From the NCBI GenBank assembly GCA_044892505.1, contig CM097883.1:80228001-80277302 (forward strand): a stretch of 49,302 nt of DNA, written 5' to 3'. Shown here piece after piece: positions 10,828 to 33,830 of the stretch. Under the pieces are notes generated by a model. The model saw only the letters and a program-made list of their open reading frames with translations. It did no database searches and was not told the origin of the DNA. Both the position numbers and the translations under genes were made by a program. Within the stretch, counting starts at the first letter, position 1. Each line of letters opens with the position of its first letter. The stretch comes from Schmidtea nova. Its lineage: Eukaryota.

Positions 10828-11095
10828 TCATTTAAACCAGGTTTTGGAGCCTCGGAGTGACGCTCTCCGTGGCATGTCGCCGGCACCCCGGCTACTTTTA
10901 CTGACCCCGCGAGATGAAGATTCATTCCATTTTTTATTTCTTTCTGGACTTCGGTCTCGTTCCCTTTCCAAGGGTTTTAATAGCATCGATTCATTTCCAT
11001 CTTAAATATGAAAATCAACAAATTCTAATTTAAACCCAGAATTTCTCTACTTCTCGATAATCCTTTCGAGCTGCTGTACATATCTCGAAACCCTC
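10828..11095 (-). CDS. Two candidate 3' exons (11095-11036, 11000-10828) of an unidentified gene; R/S/E-rich C-terminus
   Basis: A 35-nt GT-AG intron (11035-11001) joins in frame: GFRDMYSSSKGLSRSREILDGNESMLLKPLERERDRSPERNKKWNESSSRG...WFK*. An upstream acceptor TTGTATTCAG is present; the 5' exons were not found. Confidence 0.4.
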
Positions 11096-11759: not shown

Positions 11760-11849
11760 TAATATAATAAAATTGGGACTTTTTGCCGATTTTTCATAAA
11801 AATATCCCAAACAGGGATTCGATGTATTGTTGTATGTGGCACTACTTTG

Positions 11850-12480: not shown

Positions 12481-12616
12481 GCAAACTCTTTTTATATATT
12501 ATATTGTAACTATTAATATTATGCTAATTATAAATAAGGTTAAAAATGAAACTTAGTAATTTATTAAAACATTAATAAATTATATAAATATATAAATAAT
12601 TATATACTTATATAAT

Positions 12617-12648
<32 letters not shown>

Positions 12649-13799
12649 AATAATTAAACGTTCGACATTTGAGAATATAAGATGTGATAAGACTTACGAT
12701 TTTATACTCATTGACATTGACTGATAGTATTTAATAGTAGATTAACGGTTTACATAGAAATGTAGCCTATATGAGGATAATGCTGAGTTTTGATAAATTT
12801 ATTTGGTACGGCTGAATTTCCTGGTATTCAGTAGTTTAGCCGAAAGCGGATGAGAACCAATATTCCAATAATACTATTAAATCCTTATTAATTACGATGT
12901 TTCAATAATAAACTCAATGTAACAATAATTAAAATTTTCGTATTTATCCAAATATAAGACACTCCCCAATTTTTATCGTAAAAATTCAGAAAAATATTTT
13001 TTATAAGATACCGATATAAAACGATACCAAAAAAACACTAGCCAAATCCTTAAATATTTATATGAAAGACTACAAAAGCGTGAATATATGTTTTGATAAA
13101 TTTTCTTCATTTGAGTCAGTATCATTAGTATTTTGTTCTTTATATGATGCAATAAAACAATAAAGCCTAGCAATATACAGGCAGATGGGGACATTTTGAG
13201 TGCCTTGTGTTCACGTGTAATTTATTCAATAAAAAATGGTTCGATAATAAAACAATCTTAACCCTTTCCTATCTTCTTTATTTTATGTGTCCCGCCCGTT
13301 CCAATCCTAATAATGACTAGATATGAAAGTATAGTGCAATGACATAATCGCTCTATAAACAGTTGGTCATAATATAATCGACAGTGCATTGGAAATAAAC
13401 TTTTCAAAAATAATGTCATTTTTTTACAGACAGAGGATAGAATGGTTAATTTTTTTGTCATATTTTTATAGACACAGGATAGGAAAGGTTTAATTTTTAA
13501 TTAATTTCAGTGGTAAAACCCTCGTCTAACATTCGGGTCAGTGCGATAATAAAATTTGACAAATCACAATGAAGCTTTCTAATATGTCATATTAAGTAGA
13601 TATTATCTTAAAAAAGATAAAAATGGACAATTTTTTGGGATATTAATTAATGATATTCTCGTCATTTTAAAATATTTTCATAACCTATTTCAATATAATA
13701 TATTTTAAAATATAAATAAATCGAGATTTTACTGGACATTTGAATTTTAATTTTAAAATTGAAATTAAGGAGAACTTATAAATAATAAAACAATAATCT

Positions 13800-14560
13800 T
13801 TACCATCATTCGGATAAGACGGGCCATAATTAATAGTACGCCATGAATCATCTGCTGATGTCGGTTTTTCAATATCATAGAGTTCTTTATTTATTTCAGG
13901 TGCAATTACCTTGCGAGAATCTGGAAATATTTATCGTAACAATTCAATTAGCAATGCCCAATTTCACACTATTTCTCACAAATTCTCAAAACGTTTTACA
14001 CGATTACCTAATTCCTTCTTGTCACTGTATTTGTCCCCCGACCAAACGCGTACATAAATAAATCAGAAATGACAACTTATAAGGAGTTTACAAATACACC
14101 CAATCAAAATACATTTGTCCGTAATTATTTCCAAAAAGCTTCCTAGTCTGCCCTACACATTATCCGTACAGTTGACAACATACAACTATTCCAAACTTTA
14201 TTCTTTTGAACAAATTCCGATAACCGCAACAATGTTAAAGATCCAAAACTGAAAATTCCATTTTTAACATTTTCTTCATACTTGTCTCAATAAATTTTGG
14301 AGCAAACACACCAAACTCCGAAGATCATTTGAATAAATCTAATTAATCCATATTGTGCAATACAATAGATTTTGCCTTTATATTTTACACTTTATATTTC
14401 AAATTCATTTGGAAATTAAAATGTGTCCTCCAAACCACTGCGAATGGCAAGATATGATAAAAATAATGCATCTAATGCATCTTAAAACACGAAAGGCAAG
14501 GTTTATGTCACATATACGTAATGTATGTACTATTTCCCGGCATATTACAAAACCTTTTAC
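13800..14560 (-). mobile_element. Highly degenerate Ty3/gypsy reverse transcriptase relic
   Basis: LRICD, YGLIRFIQMIFG (cf. GL.RF.R.PFG), VISDLFMY (degenerate DD box) and PDSRKV...EKPTS...R.INY (RT/RNase H tether), in the expected order. Confidence 0.45.
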
Positions 14561-15451
14561 AATAGTTCTATAACAAAAATCATAAGTGCCTCTTCATATT
14601 CCTTGACTAATTTGATCAATGATCTTTACTTAACTTGGCACAATGATTTATTGAGGACTATTGAGAATGCTCAACTGCCTTCCAGTTAATAAATCAATAA
14701 ATAAGATTTCCAAATTCCAGTAATACTTGAAGGAGATACACAGTAGGTAACATGATATGCCTTTCAATAAGGAACTTTCATTCCCAGTCAATCGTTTCTC
14801 CTCAGTTCATTATAACATTACATGCGTTAACTTAACTAAAATAAGTATCCTATCCATTTCCCCTATTTTCAACAAAATACATAACAATTTCCATTGTTAG
14901 TCAACTGTCACAGTGCACTTTTCATCTTCCTCAATTAATATCAAAATTGTTGTAGTCAATGTATTTTTTGGATTACAAAAATATAGTTTCGAAACAAAAA
15001 AAAACCAATTCGAACTGAAATTATTTAAAGCCATTTATGAAAATGGAAAATCAAAAAAATAATCTCATTTTTCTTCATTTATTTTCAGCCTCGAGATCAA
15101 TATTTTAATTTATATTTAACATAAATTTCCGGCGAAAGCTTTCTCAGTACTCGTAAGAAAGGTTGTGTCGAAAAATACATTTTGAAAAAGAGATGCCAAA
15201 AATTTGTATTAAATAGAAAACACATTTATTCGAAAGAACGGAAATAAACTAAATCGTAAATAATAAGTAAAAATATATAATCTGAAAGGAAATGAGGAGA
15301 AAAGAAATTGAAAATGAAAATAGGTAAATGGTGATGGAATAGAAATGGAATTGTACACATCGATTGAATCAGTGGAATTCAATTATTCACTAGTGAGACG
15401 GTTAACATGTTTCTGCTCTACCAATTTATCTATATTATGATTCTTCTTTCA

Positions 15452-15732
15452 ATTCATCACTTAGAAAAGGCCGTGAGTCTCAATCCAAATTTTTTAGAAG
15501 CTCATGTTAATCTTGGTCATATCTTTAAACAAGCAAAGATATTCGATCGTACCGTTGCTGCCTATACCGAAGCATTAACTTTGGATTCTGATAATCGTAT
15601 TTTACACGGGAATGTTGTTTGTGTCTATTACGAACAGGGTTTGTATGAACTTGCTATTGACAGCTCTCGCAAAGCTATTGAATTGCACCTTATTTTCCCG
15701 ACGCGTACTGCAATCTAGCAAATGTATTGAAA
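15452..15732 (+). pseudogene. OGT: O-GlcNAc transferase TPR-region fragment
   Basis: [38 protein letters not shown]...[27 protein letters not shown]; after a 1-nt frameshift near 15687 it continues [13 protein letters not shown]. This closely matches recalled OGT TPRs. Truncated at both ends. Confidence 0.88.
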
Positions 15733-15989
15733 AGGAAAACTGAAACGAGAGCCCCTAGTGTGAATGGCCAACAATTCAATCGAGTCAACGTGAAGACAAT
15801 GTCACATATAGTGAATGTAATTTGCACTTAAGAATGTTCCAGCCAAACACCTTTGCCTACAGATATATGTCGCATGTTTTCTGAACACATTTTAATTGAA
15901 ATTTCGATAGGAAATACCAGCACAAAGCAGGATAGTATCAGACTACTTATTAATAACATTGAATTAGTATTGGAAACAATAACTGGAGT

Positions 15990-17970
15990 TTTTTCTCAAA
16001 GTTCCTGATGAAGCCGTAATGATTGTAAAAAGTGATTATAATGAAACTTGTCTTAATGAACCGTCTGCTTCGACCGCATCGCCAATTAGAAAAAGCAATA
16101 CATTTACCGAGTCGATAACGAGCGACATTCAGACTTCTAATCTTTCGCCGTCTAATGAAAATGCTTTCACTAGTGTCAACTCACACCAAAATCAGTCGCA
16201 AGTGTCAAGTGGCTATTTTAGAATTAATTCTCCACCACATATTGTATTTAACCAATTTAAAATGTAATCAATTAAACCGTTTAGTGCGAATACCGGCAAC
16301 CACCCTAACTTATTGGATCTTTTAATTTATTGAGAAAAGTCTATAGTTCAAACCTCTCCCAATTTCAATCACCAAGTTCAATATAGCATTTACTAAGTCA
16401 AGTATTAGATGTCATTCAAAGATCCAAAGAACCAGATGCTGTTATTGTTTTTCAAAGTTAAGCTGAGACATTTCTACGTCATTCTGACTGTAGTGGAATC
16501 CATGAAGATCTAAATAAATCAGATGACTCCGATCATTTTTCTTGTCTCAATACCAGTCTTGCTATTGACGACACGTCCATGAATTTGCGCGCATTTACAC
16601 TCCTCAACTAATCGGTCAACAAGCTCATTCGGCAGTTACAAACAATATACTACCAATCATAAATGCCAATAACAATATTGATAGTCTACTTGTGAACAAT
16701 TCAGATCCAAATCTTAACAATATCGGTTCAACAATCAACTGAACAACAATGATAACAATCTCAAAGATATTTTGTTTCAGCCTAGATATTCAGATTCTAA
16801 TTACCCAAGGCTAACAAATCATGCACACGCAGTAATGGAAACATCTGATTCTCAAACTATGTTGCCAAATGATCACTTTGCAGAAGGCATAGTTCCAGAG
16901 CAATTCGACATGGAAGCTAGTAATGCATCTCTTGACAACATATCAGACGTCGAAGAGCCCCATACAATTGTTAATAGGCCCCAATATATCAGTTTTCATG
17001 CGAATTCCAATAAGAAACATAAAACTATTTCTGATACACTCGATTCTTTTAATTTATTCCACATTATTTCTGGACATTCAAACGCTAAATCAACAGGTAA
17101 TAAAAAGCTTTGTAGAAAACAAGCCAATTTAGCAAAATCTATCACTGGCACATTGAGCTCCTGTTTGACATAATAATACCCTTTCAAAATTTCAAGAAAG
17201 CGTTCTTAACGCCTTAGCTAACCGAAGAAACACTAGACAATTACAACACGATTCAGAATCTCACGCTGTAACACAACCAACTTCTTCCGGTTGTTCTTCT
17301 TCTCTAGCCACTAGTACAACAAGTCATACACTACATCAAAGTCTATAGATTCACAAAGTAGTAACTTTATGTCTGAAACAGTGCTACAACATATTAGTAA
17401 AATACAATTTTCAATCGGCGTTACAATTTTACCAACTAAAATGACACTGTAACAAGCTATTTGTTATACAATTCCTTTCTCACCACAACATTCATTATCG
17501 ACCTATATGCGCAACAAATCCGTCTGTATATACTTCCAAACGAAATCTCAAGTCAGCTAGCTGGTGATAATGCTACATTTGGTGCTGATATCAATGAAAT
17601 AGTGTCAATACTGCAACAATTTCAAACAGATAAGAGAACTACCTCGTCTCATATAAACAACCGAAATCAGAGAACTTCGAATGTTTCGACTAACACAATT
17701 TGTCAATCGACTCGTGGCCAGCCACCTTCTTCAAATTATTCGTCCATATCGCCACCCACTAAATTGCTATCAGAACAGCCCGTGTCCAATGAGTTTATCC
17801 AGGAGCCGAAGAATTTCAATTTAACCGGAGATAAAAGCCAGACTATGGCAAGTTTTATTGTCAATTTTCATGTGTATTTCGGTATGACCTTTTCGATCCA
17901 CCCTACCAGATTGGACACCACGGTGAGTATCGGCGTTTCGGAACCCGCAAATATAATTCATCCGCTTTTG
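15990..17970 (+). other. Broken S/T/N-rich coding-like tract, probably retroelement-associated
   Basis: Successive plus-strand ORFs (16019, 16772, 17461) of similar composition; EPKNFNLTGDKSQ...F..NF..YF weakly resembles a gypsy gag N-terminus. Confidence 0.3.
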
Positions 17971-18170
17971 TCTCTTTTTTGTTTTGTGGGGCAAAACATA
18001 TTATTTACCCCAAGCCTCTACCTCCACTGTTAGGACTTTAAGGGCCGCTTTACACAATCTGACACCAATCAGTGTGTATGTCAGCTATATTTTAATGGAT
18101 ATCGCCTCGAAGATCAAGAACTTTTGTCAACTTACGGTATAACGCATAATAGAGTAATCCAAGGTTTTTT
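17968..18170 (+). pseudogene. Ubiquitin-like domain relic (one in-frame stop)
   Basis: GQNILF...*DFKGRF...QLYFNGYRLEDQELLSTYGITHNRVIQ aligns near-register with ubiquitin GKTITL...NVKAKI...[28 protein letters not shown]. The stop is TAG at 18031-18033. Confidence 0.5.
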
Positions 18171-18344
18171 TCTCTCCTCGGTGGCAACTCAGACTCAGAG
18201 AGTGACCATCAGGATGATGACATTAAGTCCAATGAGAAAAAATGAACTCTAACTCCAAATCACATAAACAGCGGTCCACCTATTTATGTCAGTATTTTCT
18301 AGACGAAAATAACTCCCCTTTAACATAGTTGATATCCACCGAGC

Positions 18345-19020
18345 TCACACTTGAAGATATAGGAGTTAACTTGTCTCGCGACAAGAATTGCCGTATCCTT
18401 CCGCTCATTCTGCCTACTATCTTCAGCAAACTTTCTGCTGTGATTCTATGAACTTCCACGCCTACTTTTAAAAAACCCTACGAGAAGTTAAAAACTGCGT
18501 TCCTTGATATTTTTAAGGAGCCAACTGCAGCGGTTTTTACAAAATAATTTAAAACCCAAACATTGGGTAAAAAAACCATCACGATTTCTTCAGCATGATA
18601 TAGCTGAATTAAAACAGATGCATTCAGGTGCAGCAGCTGATAAGAATTTGTTGATGCAACTCTTTCTTTCAGCTTTACCACCACATGCCCACCAAATTCT
18701 GACTCTCTTCTGCTGAAGACTTTGTCGAACTAGCAAAAATGGCCGACAAGATAAACGAAGTAGTTCTTCTTGGTGCACAGTTTGCGTATGCGATCCAAGT
18801 AGGTCACCAACCTATCATGACATCTTCTTCATCCTCTGCTTCAATTAAGCCCTCAACTGAAGAAGCTCTAATTGCAGCCATCACTGGGCTTAGAAAACGC
18901 ATCACAGAACTCGAGAGCTCGATGTCTTCTAGACAACCTTGTGACGTAGCACGAAATCACAACCGTAGACGCTCTCCTTCACGCTCATCCTCTAACTATG
19001 TTGTGTATGTTTTTTCATAA
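18345..19020 (+). mobile_element. Ty3/gypsy gag relic
   Basis: NPYEKLKTAF, LG.KPSRFL, LLMQLFLSALPPHAHQIL, ELAKMADKINEV, coiled coil LIAAITGLRKRITEL and RRRSPSRSSS; frameshifted; no pol follows. Confidence 0.75.
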
Positions 19021-21063
19021 TTTTTAGTTTGACATTTTTGAATTTAAAAAATTTGACCTCGTGGTGACCTTAAGTTTACCTTGTCCCATGATGACCTTGA
19101 CCTCATTATTTGTCCTTAAAAATAAAAATTTTTGATGACTCGTCGTGTGTGTCTGCGCAAAAAAAGGTACTCCCATCAGGGAGTCGCTTCATTTTGATTG
19201 GATGCACACATGCGATGGCGTGATATGTCTTTATTCCTCTGTCCACACTTCTAGTCTACTTGATACCTATAGATCTTCTGAGTATAAAATCAAAGAAACC
19301 GAGTAAAAATATCGACCCATGTTAACACAGTCTAGAACTCACACCTTGAGTATCTCTAGTCTAGATTATCTGATACGGTAATGTAAAGCATAAAAAGAAA
19401 TTTAACTTAATACTTCATATATAATTTGTCAGCGAAATATCCTGTATTAAATTAAAATATTATTTAATTATTAATTTTCCACTTATAAAATATTATGTTA
19501 AATTTCTTTTTATATTATTATTTAAAATTTTATTTTACAAAATTCACCTTTATAAATTATTATCCTAGCCTGCATCAGGGCCTTTTGCCTCCTGTGTGAT
19601 ATGTAAAAGTCAGAATTCATGAGAAGGAAAATATTCAGAAAGAAATGATAAGGCAATTGAAAAGAATTTCGTATTGGAGTGATCAGGATCTTTTAATATC
19701 GAAATAACTGCGGAGAAAGGCTTAACACTTTTACCTTATTAGAATATCAATATGTTGACAAACGGAAAAAGTTTAGTATTTTTAACACAAGTAATTCAAA
19801 GCTATTGTTATATCTTTAAGGCTTTCAATTCCATAATTATTAGTATAAAAAAAGTTATTTAAAGGATAATCTACTTTTGAAAATAATGTGAAATAATGCT
19901 TTTAATGTATAACAATCAAAACAACTTCCATATAAGTACGCTTGATAGAAATGCCTCTGTTTGATATTATATAAAAGCCAGAACATTTTTGTAAACTCTT
20001 ATAAACGGAAACTGTTAATGTGCTCTCAACGGTTCACACTGCTAGGTTAACATATGCGTCCTGTGCTTTTTAAGTTTATTTAACATTTCGCTACATGCAA
20101 TGACGTAAGATCGCCTGGAGTGTTTTACAAAGTTAATCTTTATTTTATAAATCAAAATATGCAAAATAAAAGCAATAATGAAATATTGGTATACATTTTT
20201 GTAAATTGAGTAAAAATGTATTTAAATAACATGAACCCGCAAATGCTCTTTCAGCACAGTACAAAAGTCCCATCAAAATTTATGAATACAATGAACATTA
20301 TTCCAAATAAAAGTTTAACAAATGTGTTTTTATGTTATACTCTTACTTTTGAAATCTATGCATTCAACAAAATAAACTTCCAAAACGCAGAAATATATTT
20401 ATGTGCACCCACGTGTAAATTTTAACATTAAAATTCTTCCATCACGATATTATTCTTTTTTACCTTGTCAAAACATTTGATAATTTATAATAATCAATGT
20501 GTTGCCAGATATACTGTCTTTTACGGTTTTATTACAAAGGTGTTATATAATTATATTTATCATTAAAATATCTATACACATAGAACTTTGATAACACGCT
20601 TCAATAAGATTAAGATCCTTGGGTATAATGTCAAGATGAGAAAAGATTAGAAGCATATCATACATTATGAAGTTCATCGTTTCTAGATAAGTCATTGTAA
20701 ATTCCATATTTAACGATTGAACCTATACGATATGGACCATATTTCAATGTCCATATTGCAAATGATATTCTGACTTTCCATTTATATTCTTCGAAGAACT
20801 AATTTTTTCATTTCAAAAATCATTATCAAATTTTTTAATACAATTTACCATAACTCATCACCATTAAAAACGAACCACCCGTTTGCAATGAACAGTCATT
20901 TTTAATGTCTCTTAATAAATTATAATGACATCTTCGATTTTTTAAGTCCATCTATACGTATTCCGATTCCGTTGGTTAATAAATCATATAGTTAATACAT
21001 GACGACTATTTACACATCTTTTTATAAATGTTAGCAAATTGTTCATTTAAATAATTTTTCTAT

Positions 21064-21353
21064 TTAGAAAAATAGATTTTTTAACACATTGACTGTCATG
21101 AATAATTCGGAATTCAAAAGTCCACCTCTTTTAGGGGTTAAAAGTGAAAATGATGCCAGCGAGGGCCAGGACTCTCTAATATTCCAGCTTATATATAGAG
21201 CGTCTTGATTTGCATCCAGCTTCACGGTTCTCCTACAATGGTTGTCACTCAATGTGTAACATCATTGACTCACAGAAGGTGATTAATTAGAATAAATACT
21301 TACACAACACGTAAGCATTGAATAAAATTACAAATTCACTTTTTATACATAAT
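21064..21353 (-). pseudogene. Decayed SPOC-like sequence continuing the TASOR-like gene
   Basis: One reading frame with 4 stops: YV*KVNL*FYSMLTCCVSIYS...TVKLDANQ...GGLLNSELFMTV. It aligns ungapped with recalled TASOR SPOC TLWKGQLLNKGKLLCYISLRS and loosely with EKLD... and NGMYCSLYEV. Confidence 0.4.
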
Positions 21354-21357
21354 TTAA

Positions 21358-21556
21358 TCCTTTCGGCGCCATCTGTATATCTATGTACATCAGGTCGGTC
21401 ATACAAAATGAGCGAATAAACGCGCTTCACTTTGTACTCATTTTACTAGTTAAGGTCGAGCGTTTTGTGTGACAAAATGTTTAACACAGTGACATCTCTT
21501 GAAAATTCGCGGCCTATAGTAAACGGTCTTACTAACAATTTGCAGCGTTTAAAGGG
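21358..21556. mobile_element. piggyBac-like MITE, 199 bp
   Basis: TTAA|TCCTTT...AAAGGG|TTAA: TTAA on both sides with piggyBac-type CCCTTT termini and a GC-richer interior. The TIR match is short. Confidence 0.5.
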
Positions 21557-21699
21557 TTAATATGTTACCTAATGGTAACACGATAGTAACTCAACGATTA
21601 TTAGAATTGAATATTATTAGGATTAAAGTTTCAATTAATTTCAATAATATAAATGTATCAAATTCATATAAAATGTGAATTAATTATTTATAACCTTAC

Positions 21700-22168
21700 C
21701 TTCGGTGTCTATGTTTTGAGTTGAAGATTTTTTGTAATCTGAATATTGACGATCCCAAAATGAAATCGGTGTGTGCTGAGACACCGGTTTTAATAATGCT
21801 AATGGACTTTGGTAAGTCACAGAAAACTTGTTATCTTCTGCGCCAGTTACATCTAATTTGTCATAAATCGGTTTATATTTAAAGATCATTGCAGCCGAAG
21901 GGCAACAATGTCTCGGACGAATTACAGGATCCAAATTGCCATTGGCAAATTCATAGAGATAAACCTATTATAATAGTTGATTTGCTCATAACAGTTTCCA
22001 TGAAAACAATAAAGCTTAATTTCCTACCAGAGATTTAATATATTGAATGGAATCATTTTCTTTTGGATCTGGTCTCTCTTCACATATGTGAGAGTCAAAT
22101 TTTGGAGTAGGCGCAAGAAGAACTTTGGGATCATGCATGGGAACAATCTTTCTTTTACCAAGCATGTA
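21700..22168 (-). CDS. TASOR: TASOR/TEX15-like DUF3715 protein, exons 4 (22168-22028) and 5 (21964-21700)
   Basis: Phase-0 63-nt GT-AG intron; open translation YMLGKRKIV...LAPTPKFDSHI...YIKSL|VYLYEFANG...RPRHCCPSAAMIFKYK, matching recalled TASOR IMKGKIK...LDPTPKHECHV...QYYFYEY...RPRHVCPYAVVSFTYK. Ends at a GTAAG donor. Confidence 0.88.
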
Positions 22169-22399
22169 CTAATGAAATGAAAATAAAATAAAATAATGTA
22201 GCTGCTGATTCAACATAGTTTCCGTTGTTTTTGTATATGTAAATATCCAAATAGAAAACAATATATTTTACAACAGTTCCACGAAGAGAAATTTCAATTT
22301 AACCATTTTGATAAATCACATTTCATATAAAGATTTTAAACTGGAAAAATAAATTATTTTATACACTCCTTAAGGTGTCCATATAAAGGTATTTTGGTT

Positions 22400-22850
22400 C
22401 ATTAAATTGAAATTTTCATTGTTTTTTTGTTTTGTTCTGAAATCCTTAAGCCACATAAATCGTCTTGTGGTTTCAAGATAAAATGAGAGTAACCTTTTCG
22501 CTCTTCCCTTAAAACCCCATAATTTTCATGTTTATTACCAAATCACAACTTAACATTAACATTACATTCAGTCACAAATAAAATCCATCAACATAGATTG
22601 TTCTTAAGGCACTAAGTTTATATTTTAAGACATAACATAACAACTAAACTTCCTTTAGACAGTTATCCTTTTTATTTCATGATACCATCAATCTATTGCA
22701 ACAACATATTCCAACAATAAAGATGAAATAAAATTCTTTTAATATATATAGGCTAGTGCTTAAGTTTTTAGAAAATAATAAAGTCAAAAATAACAACCTT
22801 GTCTTATTCCCGTAAACCAGTCGATTTTTAGGTGTTTCAAAATGCAAACT
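22400..22850 (-). mobile_element. LINE (CR1/L2-like) RT relic
   Basis: KHENYGFKGRAKRLLSFYL (cf. KL..YG.RG..L.LL.SYL) plus upstream FSK-like and DGI-like remnants; heavily frameshifted. Confidence 0.5.
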
Positions 22851-23899
22851 TCAACAAAAAGTTCTTCAAAGAAAATTATTTCCTTTTTGAAAAAGTTGGC
22901 CATGTAAGAACCGTAGAACAGAAAATGTTTTTAAGAATATTGTTAAACGAACTGATTGCTAAAATCAACAAAATTAATCTGAAGTCATAACAATGTAAGC
23001 TTGCACGCAGCACATGGAATAATAAATTATTGGAAGCGTGAAAACTTTAATTGATCCTTCATTGTCCTTAATTGCCTGATTTATCACCAAATGATTTCTT
23101 GTTCCCAACAATCGACAATAATTATCGCATTGTTAATAATTTAACAAAGTAGTCAAAGCTTATAAATTTCATATTTATAATACGTTTGTTCATAATAAAG
23201 GTGAATATTTTGAAAATCATTAAATTATTTTAATATAAAGATTTCTGTATAATTTTCTAAAAACTCAAGTAGTGACCCAAGTATACAAATTTAGTCACTA
23301 ATTTTATTTTGATCATCACATGGTTTTTCTATTTATTATAAGCCAATAAAATACCAAAAGTAACGAATAAAGAACTATACGAGTAATTACTGACACTTGT
23401 AATTATTTTGTACAGAATTTTGTTATTTATACCACAACTTCACACATTTCATGAACCAATCTTATAAACCTAAAATAATTTCGTTTAAATAATAGTCAGT
23501 GTCCATATCTTTCATAAATTGCATTTTTTCACTATTTACCTGAATTTTGTTATAGCATATCTTAATTCCCAACTTTTATTTAAGTTCCAGTTCAGTGCTT
23601 TATAATACTTCAAAAAAGACATTGATTTCAGACTTGTAGGTTTTACATAAGCACTGTATTCTAAAAATTTGTATTCTTATAATTAAATTTTGTCAATATC
23701 AGAGAAACCTCGGTTTTTCTTCGCCATTGGTAAAGGCAATTTTTATAGCTGAAAATGAAGTTAGCGGATAGTCGGAGTGAACATGATCATATTATTTTAA
23801 TGTCAACAAATATTAACTGAACATTTTTTCGATTGAAAACAAGTGATTTTTTTATAAAAACCAATAGATAAAAAAATTTTAAAGTACGTCAATTTCAGC

Positions 23900-24600
23900 A
23901 CAACTTTTTTCAAGTGCGCACTTTGGAAAAGGGCTGTGACGAAAATTCATGTACTTTAAAAATTAATTTAGTCTTTATAAAAAATACAATGAAGATTTCT
24001 AAAATAGAAAAGAAATGATCAAAGCTGAAAATAAGAGATGTTATTNNNNNNNNNNNNNNNNNNNNNNNNNNNNNNNNNNNNNNNNNNNNNNNNNNNNNNN
24101 NNNNNNNNNNNNNNNNNNNNNNNNNNNNNNNNNNNNNNNNNNNNNNNNNNNNNNNNNNNNNNNNNNNNNNNNNNNNNNNNNNNNNNNNNNNNNNNNNNNN
24201 NNNNNNNNNNNNNNNNNNNNNNNNNNNNNNNNNNNNNNNNNNNNNNNNNNNNNNNNNNNNNNNNNNNNNNNNNNNNNNNNNNNNNNNNNNNNNNNNNNNN
24301 NNNNNNNNNNNNNNNNNNNNNNNNNNNNNNNNNNNNNNNNNNNNNNNNNNNNNNNNNNNNNNNNNNNNNNNNNNNNNNNNNNNNNNNNNNNNNNNNNNNN
24401 NNNNNNNNNNNNNNNNNNNNNNNNNNNNNNNNNNNNNNNNNNNNNNNNNNNNNNNNNNNNNNNNNNNNNNNNNNNNNNNNNTCACAATTATTCGTAGTCG
24501 TCAATGAAATGTACTCATCGATATTCACATTGGTGTCAACATCAATAAATTCATCAAAAGTCATACAAGGTTGACCTGGATTATATGTGGTGATGTCCAA
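23900..24600 (-). mobile_element. pogo/Tigger transposase C-terminal relic spanning an N gap
   Basis: MTFDEFIDVDTNV before the gap and ITSLIF after it resemble the Tigger tail (F.DY..ID; KQ..IT.FF). Confidence 0.3.
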
Positions 24601-24689
24601 AAGTCAGTAGACAATCCAATTTAGAAACAAGATATCGGCTTGAGATTTTTTATTTGAAATAACCTTGCTAGGCAAGTTTTCAGATATTA

Positions 24690-25150
24690 TTTTACAACGT
24701 AACTACCATTATTTTTGACAAACTTTTACCACCAAAAAATAGGTCTAGGAAGCTATTTCGAAACCAATGAGCTTTTTTCCTTTAAAAAAGATTGTGACAC
24801 AAGTCTTCATTTCATCAGTGTCAGTCATAAACTTACCTTTTAGATATTTTTTGAGATGATTGGACTCAAATCCAGACCGTATGGCGGATGCTGGAGCTCC
24901 AAAGTTATTTCCCTGAATTGTGGACAGTGTCACAATACTTTAGGAGATGGGGCATTATCATGCAAAAGACATGATGCCTGCCGATGGGGTTTTAGTTTTT
25001 TCTTTCATGTAGCTTTAATGTTTTTATTGTAATACTTTCCCTTCATTTTCACATTTTTTTTCAGTAAAATCTTAATGGACAATACCACGTGAATCCCAGA
25101 AAATTTTTATCATGAGAACTCGTCGGCGAGATTTTCTACTCTTTAATATC
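24690..25150 (-). mobile_element. mariner transposase relic
   Basis: LHDNAPS...LQHPPYGLDLSP, followed by a frameshifted C-terminus ending KFVKNNGSY. Confidence 0.75.
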
Positions 25151-27370
25151 CTTGAACTCCCTTTCTTGAACTTTCCCATTCTTTAGATGATCGTTTATTC
25201 TCAGGAATATATAAAGATAATGGTGTTTCATCTTAAATCACAATATTGTTTAGCATTATGTCACCAATTTCAGTAAACAGTTTAAGGTTCTCGGTGCAGC
25301 AATGAAAACGTATTTTACTAATTTCAGAGGCTCGATCTTAGAAACCAAATCGCCTTTGCAATCCTTGCAATCTTATTTCCTTATTTGCTACAAAGGTGAT
25401 TTACTTTATCTTGTTTACTAAATGTCTCCAACCATTTTATGAGCATTTTTGAAATAGTCAGAGACGTTTTGTATAGTTACGGTAGGTTGTAGTTTGTCAT
25501 AGTGGCTTATTTCCTGCTTTTAGTTATTATTCACTCTTCTCCTTTTCACAATGGATGTATAAATTGCAATCAATTTGAGTATATTTGTAAATTTAAATTA
25601 ATTGTAGGTGGTAAAATGAGGGTGACGGTGATAGTCCTATACATTTCAATAAATAAAGAGTTTTGTTGCCGGGAAAAAAGGGAGGAAAATCGAGGTTTAA
25701 TTGTATTTTGTTTAATTATTCAATTATTAGTTCGTTTTTCTAAATATTATATCATTTTTAGAAATTTTATCAATTCTCTAAATATTTGTGTCAGGAAAAA
25801 ATCTTTAAATCTTTTTAAAATAATTTTTTAAATATTTTTTTCATACTACCTCATCCAACAATACTATAAAAAAACAATTTCAATTTTACGCATTTTGAAT
25901 TTGCAAAGGGAATGACAATTATTCTGACTTACGCATTTCCCCTTTGACAGCTTCTTCTTTAAAATGTGCTGAAAAGTTAAAATTTTGTTTATGTTAAATG
26001 TTACTAAAAGTTATTATGAAACTCAGAAACATTTTCTGTTAAGTTGTATAAAAACAAATTGGGTCCCGATTCTTCAAATGTATAAAACGCCACAATATAT
26101 TTGTAAAACCCAGTTGCATTAAATGGCTTTTTGAATTTCAAGCAATAGTCCATTTTCAGCAAACTATCAAATAGCAAAAAAAGCTTCCTGGTTTGTTGAA
26201 TCGTTATTCAGAACGAGTCCATCTTGTCTTCCTTTTCATAAATCTTTTATATGACTTATGAAAATTCCAACAATCATTATTTTTACTTTGAATATTTTCT
26301 TGAAAATTTATCGTTCACTAAGTCGTATTAAAATTTATCCGGCTACAATTCGTAAAAAATAAAATAGATTTTTCAAATTCAAAAATGTTACTATTTTGTT
26401 GAATTGAACACCATTATTTAACAAAAAATAAATCCGTATTAAATTGAAATTATTATAACAGAATCAGAATAAGTATGTGGGAAAGATGAAGTCCATGACA
26501 CATATTTGGTTTATTAGTTTAATTTTTCTATAATGTATATTCCTTTATATTTTTATTCTAGAGTCCAAATGATTTCACTTTTGAGAATCAAGTAAATTAT
26601 AAATATTAATAAACATGCAAAAACTAGATATACGTCACTTATAGATATATATATAGAAAATTTAAATAAAAGAATCCGTTCACAAGTCTTTGGCTTAAAA
26701 CGCTTTTGTTAAATAGCTTCATTTGAGATAAATACATGCTAATTTGCTAAAAGTCAATTAGAAAGAATTAAAAAAATTATAATTAATGTTGTTTCAAATA
26801 AGAGTATTTTGAATAATGATAGCATAGTAAATAAATGTCAAAGACAACATTTTGCGATTAATAATTTTTTCTTGTTATTGAATAGTGATTACTTGTTCTA
26901 ACAGATTAAAAGAATTAATATAGAACTTCAAATAAGTATAAAGAACGGAAAACATTCAATTTTTAGTCAAAGGTTTACACATAACAAGTAGAACTTTTTA
27001 AGTGGACTATATAATTTAAAATAATTTTGATTTTTTGACATTCAATCAAAAAAGTTAATCAACATTTATTTAGATGGTCTTTTTTGTGTTTAATAACCTT
27101 AACAAAATACTAAATACATATATGAAATATTTTGAGAATTACGTTTCGATATTTTTCTTAAATTTTTGATCTGCTTATTCGATCACAATAAGCAAATAGA
27201 AGTCATTATATTGCTATTACAAACATTATATAAAATCCGTTCTTTTTGTGATAAACATTATCTATAGCTATTCCATTATTGATTAATACAAGATTGAACA
27301 GATATCCTCACTTTTCATGACCTCCTTTTTCATATTTTCAGAAAGAAATATCCAATTAACAATTTTTTTA

Positions 27371-27690
27371 TCAATATATCTCATACTCCTCGGAAATGTG
27401 CGATAGAATATGTTGAAATTTCAATTTAGGATGCATTTTGTGCCACAATAACTCTTCCAAATAAATAGGGAATAATGATGCAGATGAGTCATTCATGCGC
27501 CTCATTTTTTCTTTTGCACAACTCCACATTCGTTCTATTTCCCTTTCTCATTGACAAACTAACTTAGTGACTTTTACACATGCATTTCAAAAAATGGTTG
27601 TCAATTTTGGAGGCTTACATTGATTTATCTTTCTATAAACAATCGTGACAAGCGTCACAAATCATCATATCCGCTAATAAATTATTTGAT
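27371..27690 (-). mobile_element. Merlin/ISXO2 transposase relic with the catalytic core deleted
   Basis: N-terminal zinc-ribbon remnant (CDAC...KCMC...SMRKG) joined near 27540 to IERMWSCAKEKMRR...YLEELLW...FQHILSHI (Merlin C-terminal motifs). Confidence 0.7.
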
Positions 27691-27769
27691 TTCGTCCAGA
27701 GAATGGACAATTCCTCATTTGGCATAATGTCGTAAAATAATTTGTTGTATGTTAATTATTGATTGTCTA

Positions 27770-29038
27770 CGTGCCTACCAAAAGTCTCCAGTCAGGCAGT
27801 TATTTACATTTTGCAGTTTATAATGAACAGCAATGGGAACAAATGTCACAAACACACACGAATACTGAATGTCTGTAATTCTGAGAGAATTAGTACTTCG
27901 TTATATTACGTTTCATCTAGATAACAAGGCGCATTCGTTTAGACATTGTATCGAACACTTTTGCCAGGAAATCAGGGAAGATGTGTGACCATTCCTCATG
28001 CAGATGCGTTTCCAGTTCGGAGGCGTTACGGGCAATGGAAATCATTTTGCGAACTCGTCTACCAAGGACATCCCATAGCATTCAGATCAGGGCTTTGTGG
28101 AACCCAAGCGAAAACGTTCATGATTCCTTCATAATGTGCGAAGTATGGATTGGTGCATTATCCTGTTGGAAAATGAGCCCCTCAATTTCTGGGAGAAATG
28201 GAACAAGCTCATTTTCCAGAATCGCACGATATTCCACTGACGTCATGTGATTGCTGCACTTCATTGAGGGTCAGTTCCACGAGCTGAGAAAATACTCCAA
28301 AACATGATGGAGCCTCCTCCATATCCCACAGTTGGCTGAATGCAGTCAGGGTGAAATTGATCTTCTACAAGGCGCCAACAGAATTGCTGTCTATCAGATT
28401 TGAAAAGAGTGAAACGTGATTCATCACTCCAACTGATTGAGGGCCATTGTTGTGCTGTCCAACTCCTTCTCTCCCGGCACCACTTCAAGCGAAGAGACGA
28501 CGAACTGTGTTTGTAATCAAAGGCTTCCTTGCACAGTATCTGCCATGGAAATCATGAAAATGTAATGCGCGACGAATGGTGGACATGCTGGCATGCACAG
28601 GGCCAGTGTTATATGTGGACACTAACTTGGACAGGGGAACCGACGATGAGCCACCACAAGTCGTTTCAACTGCCGTTGTGTACGGATGCTCAGAAGTTTA
28701 TGGCGGCCTGAACGTTGCTTGTTGACATGTGTCTGATCCTGGAAGTTCTTCTTCAGGAAGTAGTTAATAGTTCCTTTGGGATGGCCAGTCAATGCAGTAG
28801 TTTCACTCAGACTTTTTCCAAAGGTAACATCCGTAAATAATGCCTTTCTGAAAGTCTGTAAGCTCTCTCCCAGTATTCTGTGTGTGAGAGTGTGTGCATG
28901 TGCACATGTGCGCATGCTGCATGTTGAAGGTGTTGGTGACCTTTGTTCCCATTGCTGGTCATATTTGCACTGCAGACGTTCATTATAAACTGCAATATGT
29001 AAATAACTGCCTGACTAGAGACTTTTGGTAGGCCGGGG
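27770..29038 (-). mobile_element. Tc1 DNA transposon, copy 2 (frameshifted)
   Basis: Collinear with 8015-9362; right end GGTAGGCCGGGG|TA at 29038; about 80 nt including the start codon deleted; ISWSDESRF and QDNAPIH are retained. Confidence 0.92.
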
Positions 29039-29259
29039 TATGTATATATATATATATATATATAATTTTTTCTGAAAATATGAAAAAACGGGTGGTGTGA
29101 AACGTAAGGATCGCCGATTGATTTTCTACCATACATTTTTATTTAGACCATTTTGAAATGAAGCAATATAATGACCATACTGATTGGTTTATCCGAAAAA
29201 CTTACCCACTTAAATCAATCATATAAAAACAATGTATCACATTATAATATAATTTTTAT

Positions 29260-29965
29260 GTGATATTCGATTCTATTTCAAATTGCATAAGCGTTTGCAT
29301 TTTATTTGACTTTTATCAGTAGCATTAGAGAAACTCGATTACACCCGGAATCATGTCCAGTGACTTTGCGACCAGGTTCAAGAATTTCACTACCAAGCTT
29401 CGTCAAATATTCCAATTTTTGTAACGCTCTCATTTCAAATTGATTAATATGATTGATTTCTTTGATCATATATTTTGAAATATTTGGTTATGGATTGAAT
29501 TATCCGAAAAACTCGCCTGATTATTATCCATTGATATAATAAAATATAATCAATCAAATTAACAAAAAATCCACAATAATTTCTGCTAAATTGTTAATAA
29601 ATTTTGTAATTATTGGTAAAAATTATATGATTAATATCATAAATGTAATATTAAAATATAATTAATTAAAATTCAAACAGTAGATTAACTGTCAATAAAT
29701 TAACTTGAACAATATAAGCATTTTTGTGTTTCGGATCATCTACTAATTAAAATGATTAATGTGATATTCGATGCAATTTCTAATGTCATAAATTTTTCGA
29801 GCTTATCTGGCTCTCGCCAGTAACATGTAAGCAACTCGACTCTATCCGGAATCGAACTTAATGAATTAATGACAAGATCCAAGCATAATCTGACAAATCT
29901 TCCACCAAACTACATCAAATATGTCAATTTTTGCACAGCTCTCATCGAAATACTTTTGATGTCCT
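29260..29965 (-). pseudogene. Two diverged tandem copies (offset about 501 bp) of an unknown coding exon
   Basis: MRAVQKLTYL...LDLVINSLSSIPDRVELLTCYW...EIASNIT versus MRALQKLEYL...LNLVAKSLDMIPGVIEFL*CY*...EIESNIT. Both copies carry stops. Confidence 0.55.
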
Positions 29966-29993
29966 AAAAACTAGGCGTATGAGCAACTCATAA

Positions 29994-30068
29994 AATTCCC
30001 GTATCACGCCAAATAAGTTAAGTGTAATACAATTAAAGTTTGTAATAATTAAAGAGAATCAAATATAT

Positions 30069-30122
<54 letters not shown>

Positions 30123-30197
30123 ATATATTTGATTCTCTTTAATTATTACAAACTTTAATTGTATTACACTTAACTTATTTGGCGTGATACGGGAATT
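29994..30197. repeat. Perfect 204-bp palindrome centred on a (TA)n tract
   Basis: Arms AATTCCCGTATCACGCC...ATATGAC and GTCATAT...GGCGTGATACGGGAATT are exact reverse complements. Confidence 0.95.
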
Positions 30198-30364
30198 CTA
30201 ACTTGACAATAAATTCAAATAACTATACAAAATTATTTTATAATTATTTTTATTAAAATGAATATTTTAATTTAATTAAATAAAAAATGTTTAGCAATAT
30301 TATAATAATAACTCTCATAAAATTTAATTAATAAAAACATTTAATTTAACAATTAATTGGTTAC

Positions 30365-30911
30365 CTTGAACAAAATGAGTACTAATTCATCTCCTGCGAC
30401 GATTTTCCCTCTTGCCTCAGTCAAACAAACATCGGCATTCTGACTAATATGCACGCCAGCGACATTGTAGCCCAGATAATTATAGGGACACATTTTCACT
30501 TCCAATCCGTCGTGGGCAACTTTATCAATCATTTTCTCTTTAATTGTTGCAAGGAAACCATATCTAACGTCTGAATACTCTGAATATGAAAATTTTTCCT
30601 CGATTTCTTTGCTTTTCTCTATTTGTATTTATTATAAAAGGATAGCAATTTGTTTGGGTGTGAAATACCTTTAAACTCACGTTCAAATAATTGATTTGTG
30701 ATTAATAAAGCTTTCTGTAAATCCCAACATTGTGATAAATCATAAGATACATCCACAAATGTTTTGGAAAGTTTTTGAAACATGTCATAAGTTTCTCGAC
30801 TACTTACAGGAACTTCACTGATGTAATCTAGTTATAAATTCAATAAATTTTATTTTATTTAAAAAACCATTTACATGAATTTGAATCTATAATTGAGTTT
30901 GAAGAATGCAT
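30365..30911 (-). CDS. TASOR: TASOR/TEX15-like DUF3715 (pseudo-PARP) protein, exons 1-3 (30911-30875, 30827-30669, 30618-30365)
   Basis: GT-AG introns of 47 and 50 nt splice in frame with no stops: ...SSRETYDMFQKL...KALLITNQLFEREFKEKSKEI...YGFL...DGLEV...YLG...GVHISQNADV...LVLILFK. This matches recalled TASOR GSREFED...ACLVHNELLEKEFTEKRREL...YAFL...GL.V...LG...GVYLSRYAD...VVIFK. The start codon is tentative. Confidence 0.88.
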
Positions 30912-32601: not shown

Positions 32602-33830
32602 TCAAATTCTAACTTTGCAACTTCGGTAGTGTTTTGCATTTGTAATTCGTCCTCTGTGAAATTCTCTTTTTTTTCTTATGTTGGAAACATGACGAGGCAT
32701 ACCGTCAATCTCAAAATTTGTAGATGAATTTACTTTTGTCACTCTTCCTTCATTCCTTTGAGAAGTACATCTTGCATCAGGAGGTTTTACAAAAACCCCC
32801 TCTCGCACAGTAAACCCGCCTTCTGGATCGGTCAAGACATCTTCCACTTCATCTGGGTGTCTCCATACGTAATCGAACGTTAGGTCGGAAGGAGACAAGT
32901 CCTCATCAACATCGTCTATTAACGCCACATTGTACCAATAAATTATATCCAATGATTCTCCGCCAGACCATGCTGCCATACGCTTGATCGTTCTATGATT
33001 CCGCTCGATTATCCCATTTCCAGTACGTCGATATGCACATCTGAACATGCGCCTAACCCCCACTTTTTTGCACAGCGAATCCATCGCTCCAGATCGAAAG
33101 GATGTAGCGTTATCTACGAGTATTTCTACTGGTGAACCTTTTACCCTAAATATCTGCTCTAAATTTTGAATTGTGACTCCAACTTCCTCGCTATCTATCT
33201 CCCTCAAAATTGCAAACTGACTCGGTCCACAATAGATAATTGTTAAATACCTTTTATCGTTATAGTGAGTCACATCGATGGCGATCCTCTTTCAATTTAC
33301 CTCGACATCAAGGTTCTCGTGCTTCCATGTAACCGGTGCTGGATCAATAGATCTGCATTCTACACATTTGCTAATGACATCTTGCACGTCCATCTAAGTA
33401 ATATTTGGGAATTTTCTCTTAGCAAGATACATCGTTCTTTCGACGCCTAAATGACGAGCATGGTGAGACTTTAATAAGTCATCCATTCTTGTAATAACTA
33501 CAGATGATACAGCCTTGACCCAGTACAACCACGTCTTAGGTACTCTCGTTAGTATATCCGCCTTTTTCCTCTCTGTAGAAACTATCTTGCAACTCCTTGA
33601 TTATCTGTACTCCGCTGAATTAAAATCTTTGATATTCCGTGTGTACGTACTCTTTCTTGATTGGACAATAGGTTTACCAATATAGCACAATAACACGACA
33701 CAGAGGTTCCATTTGAGATCATCACCTCGTCCGTTTTTCTCAACTGTTTGCTTACCAACGAAGCAAAAACAACAGATCTTGAGCATCCGGAATCAATCAA
33801 AGCAATTGACTCTCTCCCATCTACTTTATT
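32602..33830 (-). mobile_element. Ty3/gypsy pol relic: protease, RNase H end, H2C2 zinc finger and integrase; RT deleted
   Basis: IDSGCSRSVV (protease), ENKADILTR (RNase H end), HHARHLG...CVECRS (zinc finger), IAIDVTH, LVDNATSF, GNGIIERNHRTIK (rve). Confidence 0.9.

What the first reader, a model, noticed from the sequence alone, without database searches (positions are those of the whole stretch)
21549..30911. Hidden TASOR/TEX15-like DUF3715 pseudo-PARP gene: a HUSH/piRNA-type transposon-silencing module in a compact AT-rich invertebrate genome
Seen: five minus-strand exons (30911-30875, 30827-30669, 30618-30365, 22168-22028, 21964-21700) have canonical GT-AG sites and compatible phases (1,1,0,0). 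They join into a stop-free 285-codon frame that the ORF track largely misses. Established: DUF3715 is the PARP-like domain of TASOR (HUSH complex) and TEX15 (piRNA-directed silencing). The spliced product reproduces its motifs in order, as recalled from human TASOR: SRE..D, A.L..N.L.E.EF.EK, Y.FL, GL.V...LG...GV..S..AD, FK.M.GK, L.PTPK...H, Y.YE, RPRH.CP.A...F.YK. Inference: this lineage retained a TASOR-like silencing factor, so a HUSH-like or nuclear piRNA pathway may exist in a reduced animal genome. HUSH is characterised mainly in vertebrates.
Basis: partly seen in the sequence, partly recalled or inferred. Interest (0 to 1): 0.88.

Follow-up and report, generated by a model that had tools for sequence, protein, structure and literature searches.

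The report
Stand-alone TASOR-type pseudo-PARP gene
The hidden gene is real and encodes the catalytically dead PARP-like domain known from the transposon silencers TASOR and TEX15, but it belongs to an already known invertebrate group that has this domain alone, so it does not show that a HUSH complex exists here.

Summary
The five minus-strand exons have AG/GT borders and join into 285 stop-free codons (chance about 5e-11). The product hits Pfam DUF3715 (E 5e-14) and the solved human TASOR pseudo-PARP domain (6TL1, E 1e-15) over the whole domain. The N gap lies inside the 8.2-kb intron 3. Homologues align without a break across that junction, and two other taxa have a phase-0 intron at the same codon boundary.

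The gene is longer than claimed. A contig from a related species joins the exon-5 donor (21700) to a sixth exon at 13920-13804. The supposed truncating MITE is therefore intronic, single-copy DNA. Differences from that species are mostly synonymous (12 of 19), which points to purifying selection.

The closest relatives are Macrostomum lignano "TASOR pseudo-PARP domain-containing protein" and a Lingula protein. Both are short proteins with DUF3715 and no other Pfam domain. I found no SPOC, DomI, PIN or TEX15 domain. HUSH partners could not be searched.

Stand-alone and TASOR-like DUF3715 proteins in invertebrates are already published (PMC10578480). The sequence piece runs at least 327 Mb beyond the window, so the genome is not compact.

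Verdict: a real gene, a new member of a known kind, of modest interest. The HUSH inference is unsupported.

The parts
30875..30911 (-). Exon 1 (37 nt, ATG start, donor CAT|GTAAAT). Inferred only.
   Evidence: An ATG and a GT donor are present, and the phase fits exon 2. An in-frame TAA lies just upstream of exon 2, so an upstream coding exon is needed. The N-terminal length matches Macrostomum P0002 and Lingula P0005. There is no homology or read support.
30669..30827 (-). Exon 2. It encodes the N-terminal helices of the pseudo-PARP domain (SRE...EREFK); the domain starts near 30804.
   Evidence: AG/GT borders. It aligns to TASOR 6TL1 from query residue 21.
30365..30618 (-). Exon 3, the core of the domain. 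It includes L88 at the position of the catalytic histidine and H122 at the position of TASOR Y217.
   Evidence: phmmer with this exon alone finds Macrostomum, Lingula and Logan DUF3715 proteins. tblastn hits end exactly at 30365.
22169..30364 (-). Intron 3 (8196 nt as assembled), at a conserved phase-0 intron position. It holds the N gap at 24046-24481 and a Tc1-like DNA transposon at 27773-29174.
   Evidence: The Tc1-like copy and its inverted ends come from self-BLAST. The other copy has Tc3-type HTH and DDE_3 hits. The same intron position is seen in L001 and L002.
22028..22168 (-). Exon 4 (YMLGK...PTPKFDSH...QYIKSL). It includes Y193, which matches TASOR Y295, the residue that plugs the nicotinamide pocket.
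   Evidence: DNA contigs of the same species are identical here. Contigs of the related species differ only at third codon positions among the differences listed.
21700..21964 (-). Exon 5. It encodes the end of the domain (YLYEF...RPRHCCP...FKYK, up to about 21872) and then a 57-residue tail.
   Evidence: The related-species contig is about 91% identical and leaves the window exactly at the donor, 21700.
13921..21699 (-). Intron 5 (7779 nt). It holds high-copy repeats, plus-strand ORFs and the stretch 20560-21699 that another note called a truncating MITE.
   Evidence: The donor and acceptor are defined by the related-species contig. K-mer depth is 140-8000x at 18101-18500, 19101-19300 and 19501-19900, but 6-12x (single copy) at 20501-21300.
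13804..13920 (-). Exon 6 (117 nt, phase 1 in and out; DSRKVIAPEI...SYPND).
   Evidence: The 30 loose letters of the organism-A contig next to 21700 match 13920-13891 at 28 of 30 positions. A T-rich tract and AG precede 13920, and the donor is G|GTAAAG at 13804. The frame stays open.
10828..11000 (-). Candidate last exon (57 codons plus TGA; rich in Arg, Ser and Lys). Unproven.
   Evidence: It is the best phase-compatible acceptor downstream of exon 6: T-rich tract plus AG, GC 0.47 against about 0.3 around it. There is no homology, Pfam or read support.

Best explanation
This is an intact, single-copy, multi-exon gene on the minus strand. It has at least six exons between 30911 and 13804, and its 3' end is unresolved. 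It encodes a stand-alone DUF3715 (RDTS, pseudo-PARP) protein. Residues about 21-228 form a PARP-like domain of the TASOR type that cannot be a catalytic PARP. A non-conserved tail follows, with no recognisable SPOC, DomI, PIN or TEX15 domain. It is the orthologue or close paralogue of the short DUF3715 proteins of Macrostomum lignano and Lingula anatina, so the source is probably a flatworm or another spiralian. Two of its introns have grown to about 8 kb through transposon insertions, while the other three are 47-63 nt. Shown here: the exon structure, the domain identity, the conserved intron position, purifying selection against a sister species, and a spliced exon 5-exon 6 product in that species. 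Inferred only: by analogy with TASOR and TEX15, whose DUF3715 domains are interchangeable and needed for RNA-directed transposon silencing downstream of target recognition, the protein probably acts as an adaptor in nuclear, transcript-dependent repression, with its tail binding lineage-specific partners. It is not evidence for a HUSH complex.
For: Structure and identity: (family profile against PDB: TASOR E 2e-26, and no catalytic PARP at E up to 10). Junction across the gap. Sixth exon and splicing in a related species. Constraint: 12 synonymous against 7 non-synonymous among the listed differences, 14 of 19 at codon position 3 (p = 4e-4). All non-synonymous changes lie in the tail after the domain. 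Single copy and identical in independent DNA contigs of the same species. Relatives: P0002 (Macrostomum, 488 aa, named 'TASOR pseudo-PARP domain-containing protein') and P0005 (Lingula, 622 aa). Both have DUF3715 as their only Pfam domain. Pseudo-enzyme features, from the 6TL1 alignment read with PMC7532188: L88 = TASOR L184 at the catalytic His position, Y193 = Y295 (pocket plug), Y201-E202-F203 = Y303-E304-Y305, and a 16-residue beta8-beta9 loop ending in RPRH (TASOR 14 residues, PARPs 5). Functional analogy: PMC10578480, PMC7532188, PMC7619638.
Against: No RNA run of the window's own species was found, and no read joins exon 3 to exon 4. The run that gives the exon 5-6 junction is only guessed to be RNA. 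It also holds intron 4 and part of intron 3, so a retrocopy in DNA is not excluded. Exon 1 and the 3' end are not established, so a further domain in undetected exons cannot be ruled out. Pfam's SPOC model may miss a divergent TASOR-type SPOC. TASOR Y217 is His here and the essential Y305 is Phe, so function may differ. No structure could be modelled. No functional data exist for any stand-alone DUF3715 protein in the papers read.
Confidence: 0.8

Rival explanations
1. It is a true TASOR orthologue (DUF3715-SPOC-DomI, the core of a HUSH-like complex) whose 3' part was cut off by a piggyBac-like MITE at 20560-21699, leaving a decayed SPOC domain downstream. This combines the first reader's reading with note s1-399604.
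For: The domain is closest to TASOR among solved structures. TASOR-like proteins do occur in invertebrates (PMC10578480). Two GGGTTAA motifs lie at 21135 and 21554.
Against: The exon-5 donor is spliced to exon 6 at 13920 in a related species, so 20560-21699 is intron. That stretch has single-copy k-mer depth, and no inverted TTAACCC/GGGTTAA pair exists between 15000 and 32000. Minus-strand ORF pieces downstream give no Pfam or PDB hit. The nearest complete relatives have no second domain. The exon sequence is under purifying selection, which does not fit a wrecked gene.
Confidence: 0.05
2. It is a TEX15-type germline factor, a 'truncated Tex15' as the stand-alone DUF3715 genes of cnidarians have been labelled. 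On this reading it works with nuclear PIWI and not in a HUSH-like somatic pathway.
For: Stand-alone DUF3715 proteins in cnidarians were classed this way (bioRxiv 10.64898/2026.09.07.749791). An unchecked scan note reports a PIWI gene elsewhere in this genome. TEX15 and TASOR domains are functionally interchangeable (PMC10578480).
Against: No TEX15 domain was found. PMC10578480 states that TEX15 is vertebrate-specific. The only solved relative that is hit is TASOR. No TEX15 sequence was available here for a direct comparison or a tree.
Confidence: 0.1
3. It is a decaying or non-functional gene copy: a pseudogene, or a chimera made by scaffolding across the gap.
For: The gene has two giant TE-filled introns and an assembly gap between exons 3 and 4. 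No protein of this species or of its close relative is in the protein collections. No RNA holder is on record.
Against: Six exons are without a stop or frameshift and have canonical splice sites. There is an excess of synonymous change against the sister species. A spliced product exists in that species. Exons 3 and 4 abut with no residue lost or duplicated, at a conserved intron position.
Confidence: 0.05

Closest known systems
Macrostomum lignano 'TASOR pseudo-PARP domain-containing protein' (PAA83647.1 / A0A267GDX0, 488 aa) and Lingula anatina LOC106162540 (XP_013395306.1, 622 aa)
   Same: All have an N-terminal DUF3715 domain of the same length starting within about 25 residues of the N-terminus. 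They share 38-45% identity over exon 3. They share the YGFL, LGY..GV, ADVCL, PTP.FDSH, YLYEF and RPRHCCP motifs. No second Pfam domain is present.
   Different: The tails are unrelated and, in those two species, of low complexity by eye. The window's tail (exon 5 end plus exon 6) matches neither. The window gene has 8-kb introns. Its 3' end is not yet known.
Human TASOR (HUSH subunit), pseudo-PARP domain, PDB 6TL1
   Same: The whole domain aligns (E 1e-15; family profile E 2e-26). Leu sits at the catalytic His position, the Tyr pocket plug is conserved, and the long beta8-beta9 loop ends in RPRH with an aromatic residue at the essential Y305 position.
   Different: No SPOC, DomI, DomII/PIN or periphilin-binding region was found. 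TASOR Y217 is His and Y305 is Phe. The protein is probably a few hundred residues long, against 1670 for TASOR.
TEX15 (vertebrate piRNA-pathway factor) and cnidarian 'truncated Tex15' stand-alone DUF3715 genes
   Same: They share the DUF3715 domain. The cnidarian genes also have this domain alone.
   Different: No TEX15 domains were found. TEX15 proper is reported as vertebrate-specific (PMC10578480).
Catalytic PARPs and other pseudo-PARPs (ZAP/PARP13, plant RCD1)
   Same: They share the fold class. The Atlas model of the Lingula relative superposes on PARP catalytic domains at TM about 0.65.
   Different: There is no PF00644 hit and no PDB PARP hit at E up to 10. The catalytic His is absent.

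Membership tests
DUF3715 / RDTS pseudo-PARP domain (Pfam PF12509) | Matches the family HMM above the curated threshold over most of its length | tested here: met
   53 bits against a cut-off of 28.5, E 5e-14, profile positions 15-150 of 150.
DUF3715 / RDTS pseudo-PARP domain (Pfam PF12509) | Sequence homology to the solved TASOR pseudo-PARP domain across the whole fold | tested here: met
   6TL1: E 1.2e-15, query 21-228 against chain 10-210 of 214. Family profile: E 2.2e-26.
DUF3715 / RDTS pseudo-PARP domain (Pfam PF12509) | Degenerate NAD+ site: the catalytic His is replaced and the nicotinamide pocket is plugged by Tyr | tested here: met
   L88 aligns with TASOR L184 and Y193 with Y295 (residue roles from PMC7532188). 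The Glu position of the H-Y-E triad was not mapped.
DUF3715 / RDTS pseudo-PARP domain (Pfam PF12509) | Extended beta8-beta9 loop with the functionally essential aromatic residue (TASOR Y305) | tested here: met
   The loop Y201-H216 has 16 residues (TASOR 14, PARPs 5). F203 sits at the Y305 position and the RPRH motif is conserved. Whether Phe can replace Tyr is unknown.
DUF3715 / RDTS pseudo-PARP domain (Pfam PF12509) | PARP-like three-dimensional fold | tested here: inconclusive
The AF2 model of the Macrostomum relative, built from a 9-row alignment, failed (pLDDT 37). The Atlas model of the Lingula relative matches PARP domains at TM 0.64-0.67.
TASOR-like proteins (DUF3715-SPOC-DomI; PMC10578480) | SPOC and DomI domains directly after DUF3715 | tested here: not met
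   The 96 residues after the domain (exon 5 tail plus exon 6) and all minus-strand ORF pieces of at least 40 aa tested downstream give no Pfam or PDB hit. Complete relatives have none. Two caveats apply: the 3' end is unresolved, and Pfam SPOC may miss a divergent TASOR SPOC.
HUSH complex | Partner subunits MPP8 and periphilin (and effectors SETDB1, MORC2) encoded in the genome, and the TASOR regions that bind them | not testable with these tools
   Only this window can be read. The scan's notes hold no MPP8, periphilin, SETDB1 or MORC entry, which proves nothing. The binding regions (SPOC-DomI, residues 1014-1095 of TASOR) were not found.
TEX15 | TEX15 domain(s) C-terminal to DUF3715 | tested here: not met
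   No TEX15 Pfam hit in the product or in downstream pieces.
Catalytic PARP (PF00644) | H-Y-E or H-Y-x triad and a match to the PARP catalytic HMM | tested here: not met
   No PF00644 hit at E up to 1. Leu sits at the His position. No PARP chain was hit in PDB at E up to 10.

The most novel reading that the evidence does not exclude
In flatworms, and perhaps in spiralians generally, a stand-alone RDTS/pseudo-PARP protein is the minimal ancestral effector of transcript-guided transposon silencing. It would work with nuclear PIWI through its lineage-specific tail, without SPOC-DomI, MPP8 or periphilin. TASOR and TEX15 would then be later elaborations of this module. The window's gene would be a directly testable (RNAi) entry point in a regenerating flatworm.
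Probability: 0.15. Interest if true: 0.65.

Novelty: new member of a known kind. Interest (0 to 1): 0.3.

Why it matters
It adds a correctly modelled, apparently unannotated DUF3715 gene to a spiralian genome. It also shows that gene models here can hide behind 8-kb, transposon-filled introns and assembly gaps. The function of the DUF3715 domain is still unclear even in mammals (PMC7619638). A short protein that carries this domain alone, in an animal where RNAi is easy, could help to isolate what the domain does. The finding does not extend HUSH outside vertebrates, and DUF3715 proteins in invertebrates were already described (PMC10578480).

Tried and rejected
1. The search for homologous proteins with the spliced 285-aa product found nothing in the 157-499 aa range. 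With exon 5 it found no candidates. With the Lingula domain it found only itself.

I then used exon 3 by reference and sent the spliced product to no further remote tool. One search went out in the same batch.

3. Structure prediction of the window's own protein was therefore not possible. The AF2 model of Macrostomum P0002:1-240 with alignment A1 was unusable (pLDDT 37), so I ran no fold search.

4. No run on record as RNA was found for the window's species. The single read-laying run (6000 letters, 16301-22300) could not include exon 3, so the 30365->22168 junction has no read evidence.

5. I first read the organism-A contig break at 21700 as an 11-nt indel at the donor. I rejected this when its loose end matched 13920-13891.

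6. The piggyBac MITE reading is rejected: there are no inverted ends and the depth is single-copy.

7. The search for SPOC or other domains in downstream and intronic ORF pieces was negative.

8. Rfam and tRNA scans of the window found nothing.

9. A TASOR / TASOR2 / TEX15 tree was not made, because no such sequences could be obtained.


Full report
**Observation**

The five minus-strand exons are at the stated coordinates: 30911-30875, 30827-30669, 30618-30365, 22168-22028 and 21964-21700. Each internal border is AG|exon|GT. Together they give 856 nt, which is 285 codons with no stop. With the window's base composition, about 8% of random codons on this strand are stops. An open run of 285 codons therefore has a chance of about 5e-11.

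The product scores 53 bits on Pfam DUF3715 (PF12509, cut-off 28.5, E 5e-14), covering profile positions 15-150 of 150. It scores 60.7 bits (E 1.2e-15) on the solved pseudo-PARP domain of human TASOR, PDB 6TL1. That alignment runs from query residue 21 to 228 and from chain residue 10 to 210 of 214.

**The assembly gap**

The N run at 24046-24481 lies inside intron 3 (30364-22169). It is 1.9 kb from exon 4 and 5.9 kb from exon 3, so no reading frame crosses it. The real question is whether exons 3 and 4 belong together. Three independent lines say they do.

- The TASOR alignment passes the junction with no gap (LILFK|YMLGK against VIFKIMKGK).
- In tblastn, Macrostomum P0002 residues 81-147 end exactly at 30365, and the next residues start at 22168. 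In the alignment, exons 3, 4 and 5 tile the domain with no residue lost or duplicated.
- Two unrelated loci that carry family members have a phase-0 GT..AG intron at the same codon boundary, K|F or K|Y. These are L001 (a Logan contig) and L002 (a JGI metagenome contig).

Intron 3 therefore sits at an old intron position and has simply grown. It holds a 1.4-kb Tc1-like element (27773-29174, with inverted ends). This is 89-96% identical to a second copy at 8020-9587, whose ORF hits the Tc3-type HTH and DDE_3 families.

The true intron length and the scaffold join itself remain untested.

**The gene is longer than claimed**

Read laying on 16301-22300 showed two kinds of run.

- Runs X19 and X20 (organism C) are DNA contigs identical to the window. 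Their depth over exons 4-5 and their flanks is 7-20x, so the gene is single-copy.
- Run X14 (organism A) comes from a related species, about 91% identical in exon 5.

One X14 contig follows exon 5 and leaves the window exactly at the predicted donor, 21700. Its next 30 letters match the window at 13920-13891 on the minus strand at 28 of 30 positions. No shuffle produced a match for the first pattern. At 13922-13921 there is an AG after a T-rich tract. The frame carried over from exon 5 stays open for 39 codons, and a G|GTAAAG donor follows at 13804.

Exon 6 is therefore 13920-13804, and intron 5 is 21699-13921 (7779 nt). The contig proves that a spliced exon 5-exon 6 molecule exists in the sister species. 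The run is only guessed to be RNA, and it also holds intron 4 and the end of intron 3. I read it as RNA-seq that includes some pre-mRNA, but a young retrocopy in DNA is a formal alternative.

Eighteen runs of organisms A and B, from eight studies, hold the conserved exon words. Some of these runs hold only 4-5 million letters. This fits transcriptomes better than genomic DNA.

Beyond exon 6 I can only offer a candidate last exon at 11000-10828. It is phase-compatible, has GC 0.47, and encodes an Arg/Ser/Lys-rich stretch.

**Constraint**

The tool listed 19 differences between organism A and the window in exons 4-5. Of these, 14 are at third codon positions (binomial p = 4e-4) and 12 are synonymous. 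All seven non-synonymous changes lie in the tail after the domain. The domain is under purifying selection. Together with six intact exons and canonical splice sites, this argues against a pseudogene.

**The 'truncating MITE' (note s1-399604)**

The stretch 20560-21699 is intronic. It has single-copy k-mer depth (6-12x), whereas real repeats nearby reach 140-8000x. It has no inverted TTAACCC/GGGTTAA ends: the two GGGTTAA motifs point the same way. Minus-strand ORF pieces downstream, at 18292-18729 and 9500-13930, give no Pfam or PDB hit. I find no truncation and no SPOC remnant.

**What the gene is**

An exhaustive phmmer search with exon 3 against 1.84 billion representatives gave only five hits.

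- Macrostomum lignano proteins named 'DUF3715 domain-containing' or 'TASOR pseudo-PARP domain-containing protein' (488 aa).
- An uncharacterised Lingula anatina protein (622 aa).
- ORF fragments on Logan and JGI contigs.

In Pfam, the complete relatives carry DUF3715 and nothing else. By eye, their tails are of low complexity. A profile of this group hits TASOR in the PDB at E 2e-26, and hits no catalytic PARP even at E up to 10.

I read the 6TL1 alignment together with Douse et al. (PMC7532188).

| Residue here | TASOR residue | Role in TASOR |
|---|---|---|
| L88 | L184 | Position of the catalytic His of PARPs |
| H122 | Y217 | The one surviving NAD-site residue; dispensable in TASOR |
| Y193 | Y295 | Plugs the nicotinamide cleft |
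| Y201-E202-F203 | Y303-E304-Y305 | Start of the beta8-beta9 loop; Y305 is essential |
| H216 | H316 | End of the loop (RPRH motif) |

The beta8-beta9 loop has 16 residues here, against 14 in TASOR and 5 in PARPs. This is a pseudo-PARP of the TASOR type.

**What the gene is not**

Schopp et al. (PMC10578480) define TASOR-like proteins by the DUF3715-SPOC-DomI combination. They also state that TEX15 is vertebrate-specific. Neither SPOC-DomI nor a TEX15 domain was found here or in the nearest relatives.

In TASOR the pseudo-PARP domain is needed for silencing but not for HUSH assembly (PMC7532188, PMC10578480). The deletion mutants lacking SPOC or DomI were non-functional in that study. The domain alone is therefore no evidence for a HUSH complex. 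The partners (MPP8, periphilin, SETDB1, MORC) could not be searched: the tools read only this window, and the scan's notes hold none of them.

The genome is also not compact. Notes on the same sequence piece lie 327 Mb beyond the window.

**How it probably works (inference)**

The protein would be a dead PARP-fold module followed by a rapidly evolving tail. In mammals the domain acts downstream of target recognition and binds single-stranded RNA weakly. It can also be swapped between TASOR and TEX15 (PMC7532188, PMC10578480, PMC7619638).

The most likely role here is an adaptor in nuclear, transcript-dependent repression of transposons, with the tail recruiting lineage-specific partners. I give this function about 35-40%. 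I am about 95% sure of the identity as a stand-alone DUF3715 gene.

**Novelty**

DUF3715 proteins throughout Metazoa (PMC10578480) and stand-alone DUF3715 genes in cnidarians (bioRxiv 10.64898/2026.09.07.749791) are published. The Macrostomum relative already carries the name in UniProt. A full-text search returned 4,071 papers with at least two of the six terms; none of the 15 listed contains TASOR.

This is a new member of a known kind and of modest interest. The useful additions are the corrected gene model (six or more exons, two giant introns) and the removal of the 'truncated by a MITE' reading.

**Limits**

- No structure model of the window's own product could be made.
- There is no RNA evidence from the window's own species.
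- Exon 1 and the 3' end are unproven.
- No tree with TASOR, TASOR2 or TEX15 was made.

Noticed in passing
window 8020-9587 and 27773-29174: Two copies of a Tc1-like DNA transposon, 89-96% identical. The first has a nearly full-length transposase ORF (Tc3-type HTH plus DDE_3) interrupted only by an N gap. The second has inverted ends and sits inside intron 3 of the pseudo-PARP gene. The family may be recently active.
   Followed up: partly
window 18101-18500, 19101-19300, 19501-19900: Very high-copy repeats inside intron 5. K-mer depth in same-species DNA contigs is 140-8000x against about 10-20x for the flanks, and many contigs break at 19644-19741. The repeat family was not identified.
   Followed up: no
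window 17478-17536 and 17575-17633: Two 59-nt pieces inside intron 5 are about 94% conserved in contigs of two other species (organisms A and B). Unrelated sequence sits on both sides, as for small exons of a nested gene. They lie within a plus-strand ORF (17461-18033) that has no Pfam hit.
   Followed up: no
window 15407-15718 (+): An ORF with clear tetratricopeptide repeats (TPR_1, E 1e-12) inside intron 5, on the strand opposite to the pseudo-PARP gene. It is either a nested gene exon or a gene fragment.
   Followed up: partly
window 20560-21699: The stretch that another note (s1-399604) calls a piggyBac-like MITE has single-copy depth and no inverted ends, and it lies in an intron. A 43-nt piece at 21432-21474 is shared with contigs of organisms A and B.
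   Followed up: yes
window 32602-33273 (-): A 223-aa ORF with a weak integrase-core (rve) match. It is a retrotransposon remnant 1.7 kb upstream of the gene's presumed start.
   Followed up: partly
window 38426-39953: Another DNA-transposon-like unit. Inverted repeats at 38426-38587 and 39790-39953 flank plus-strand ORFs with paired-box/HTH matches and a DDE-like continuation.
   Followed up: partly
window 4079-5203 (+): A 374-aa single-exon ORF, the longest in the window without N. It has a hydrophobic stretch and no significant Pfam hit. It is an unidentified gene on the opposite strand, downstream of the pseudo-PARP gene.
   Followed up: no
L002 4082-5425 (JGI metagenome contig): In this distant family member, the exon that ends the DUF3715 domain continues as a 447-aa ORF with no Pfam hit. 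This is a different, long tail on the same domain.
   Followed up: partly
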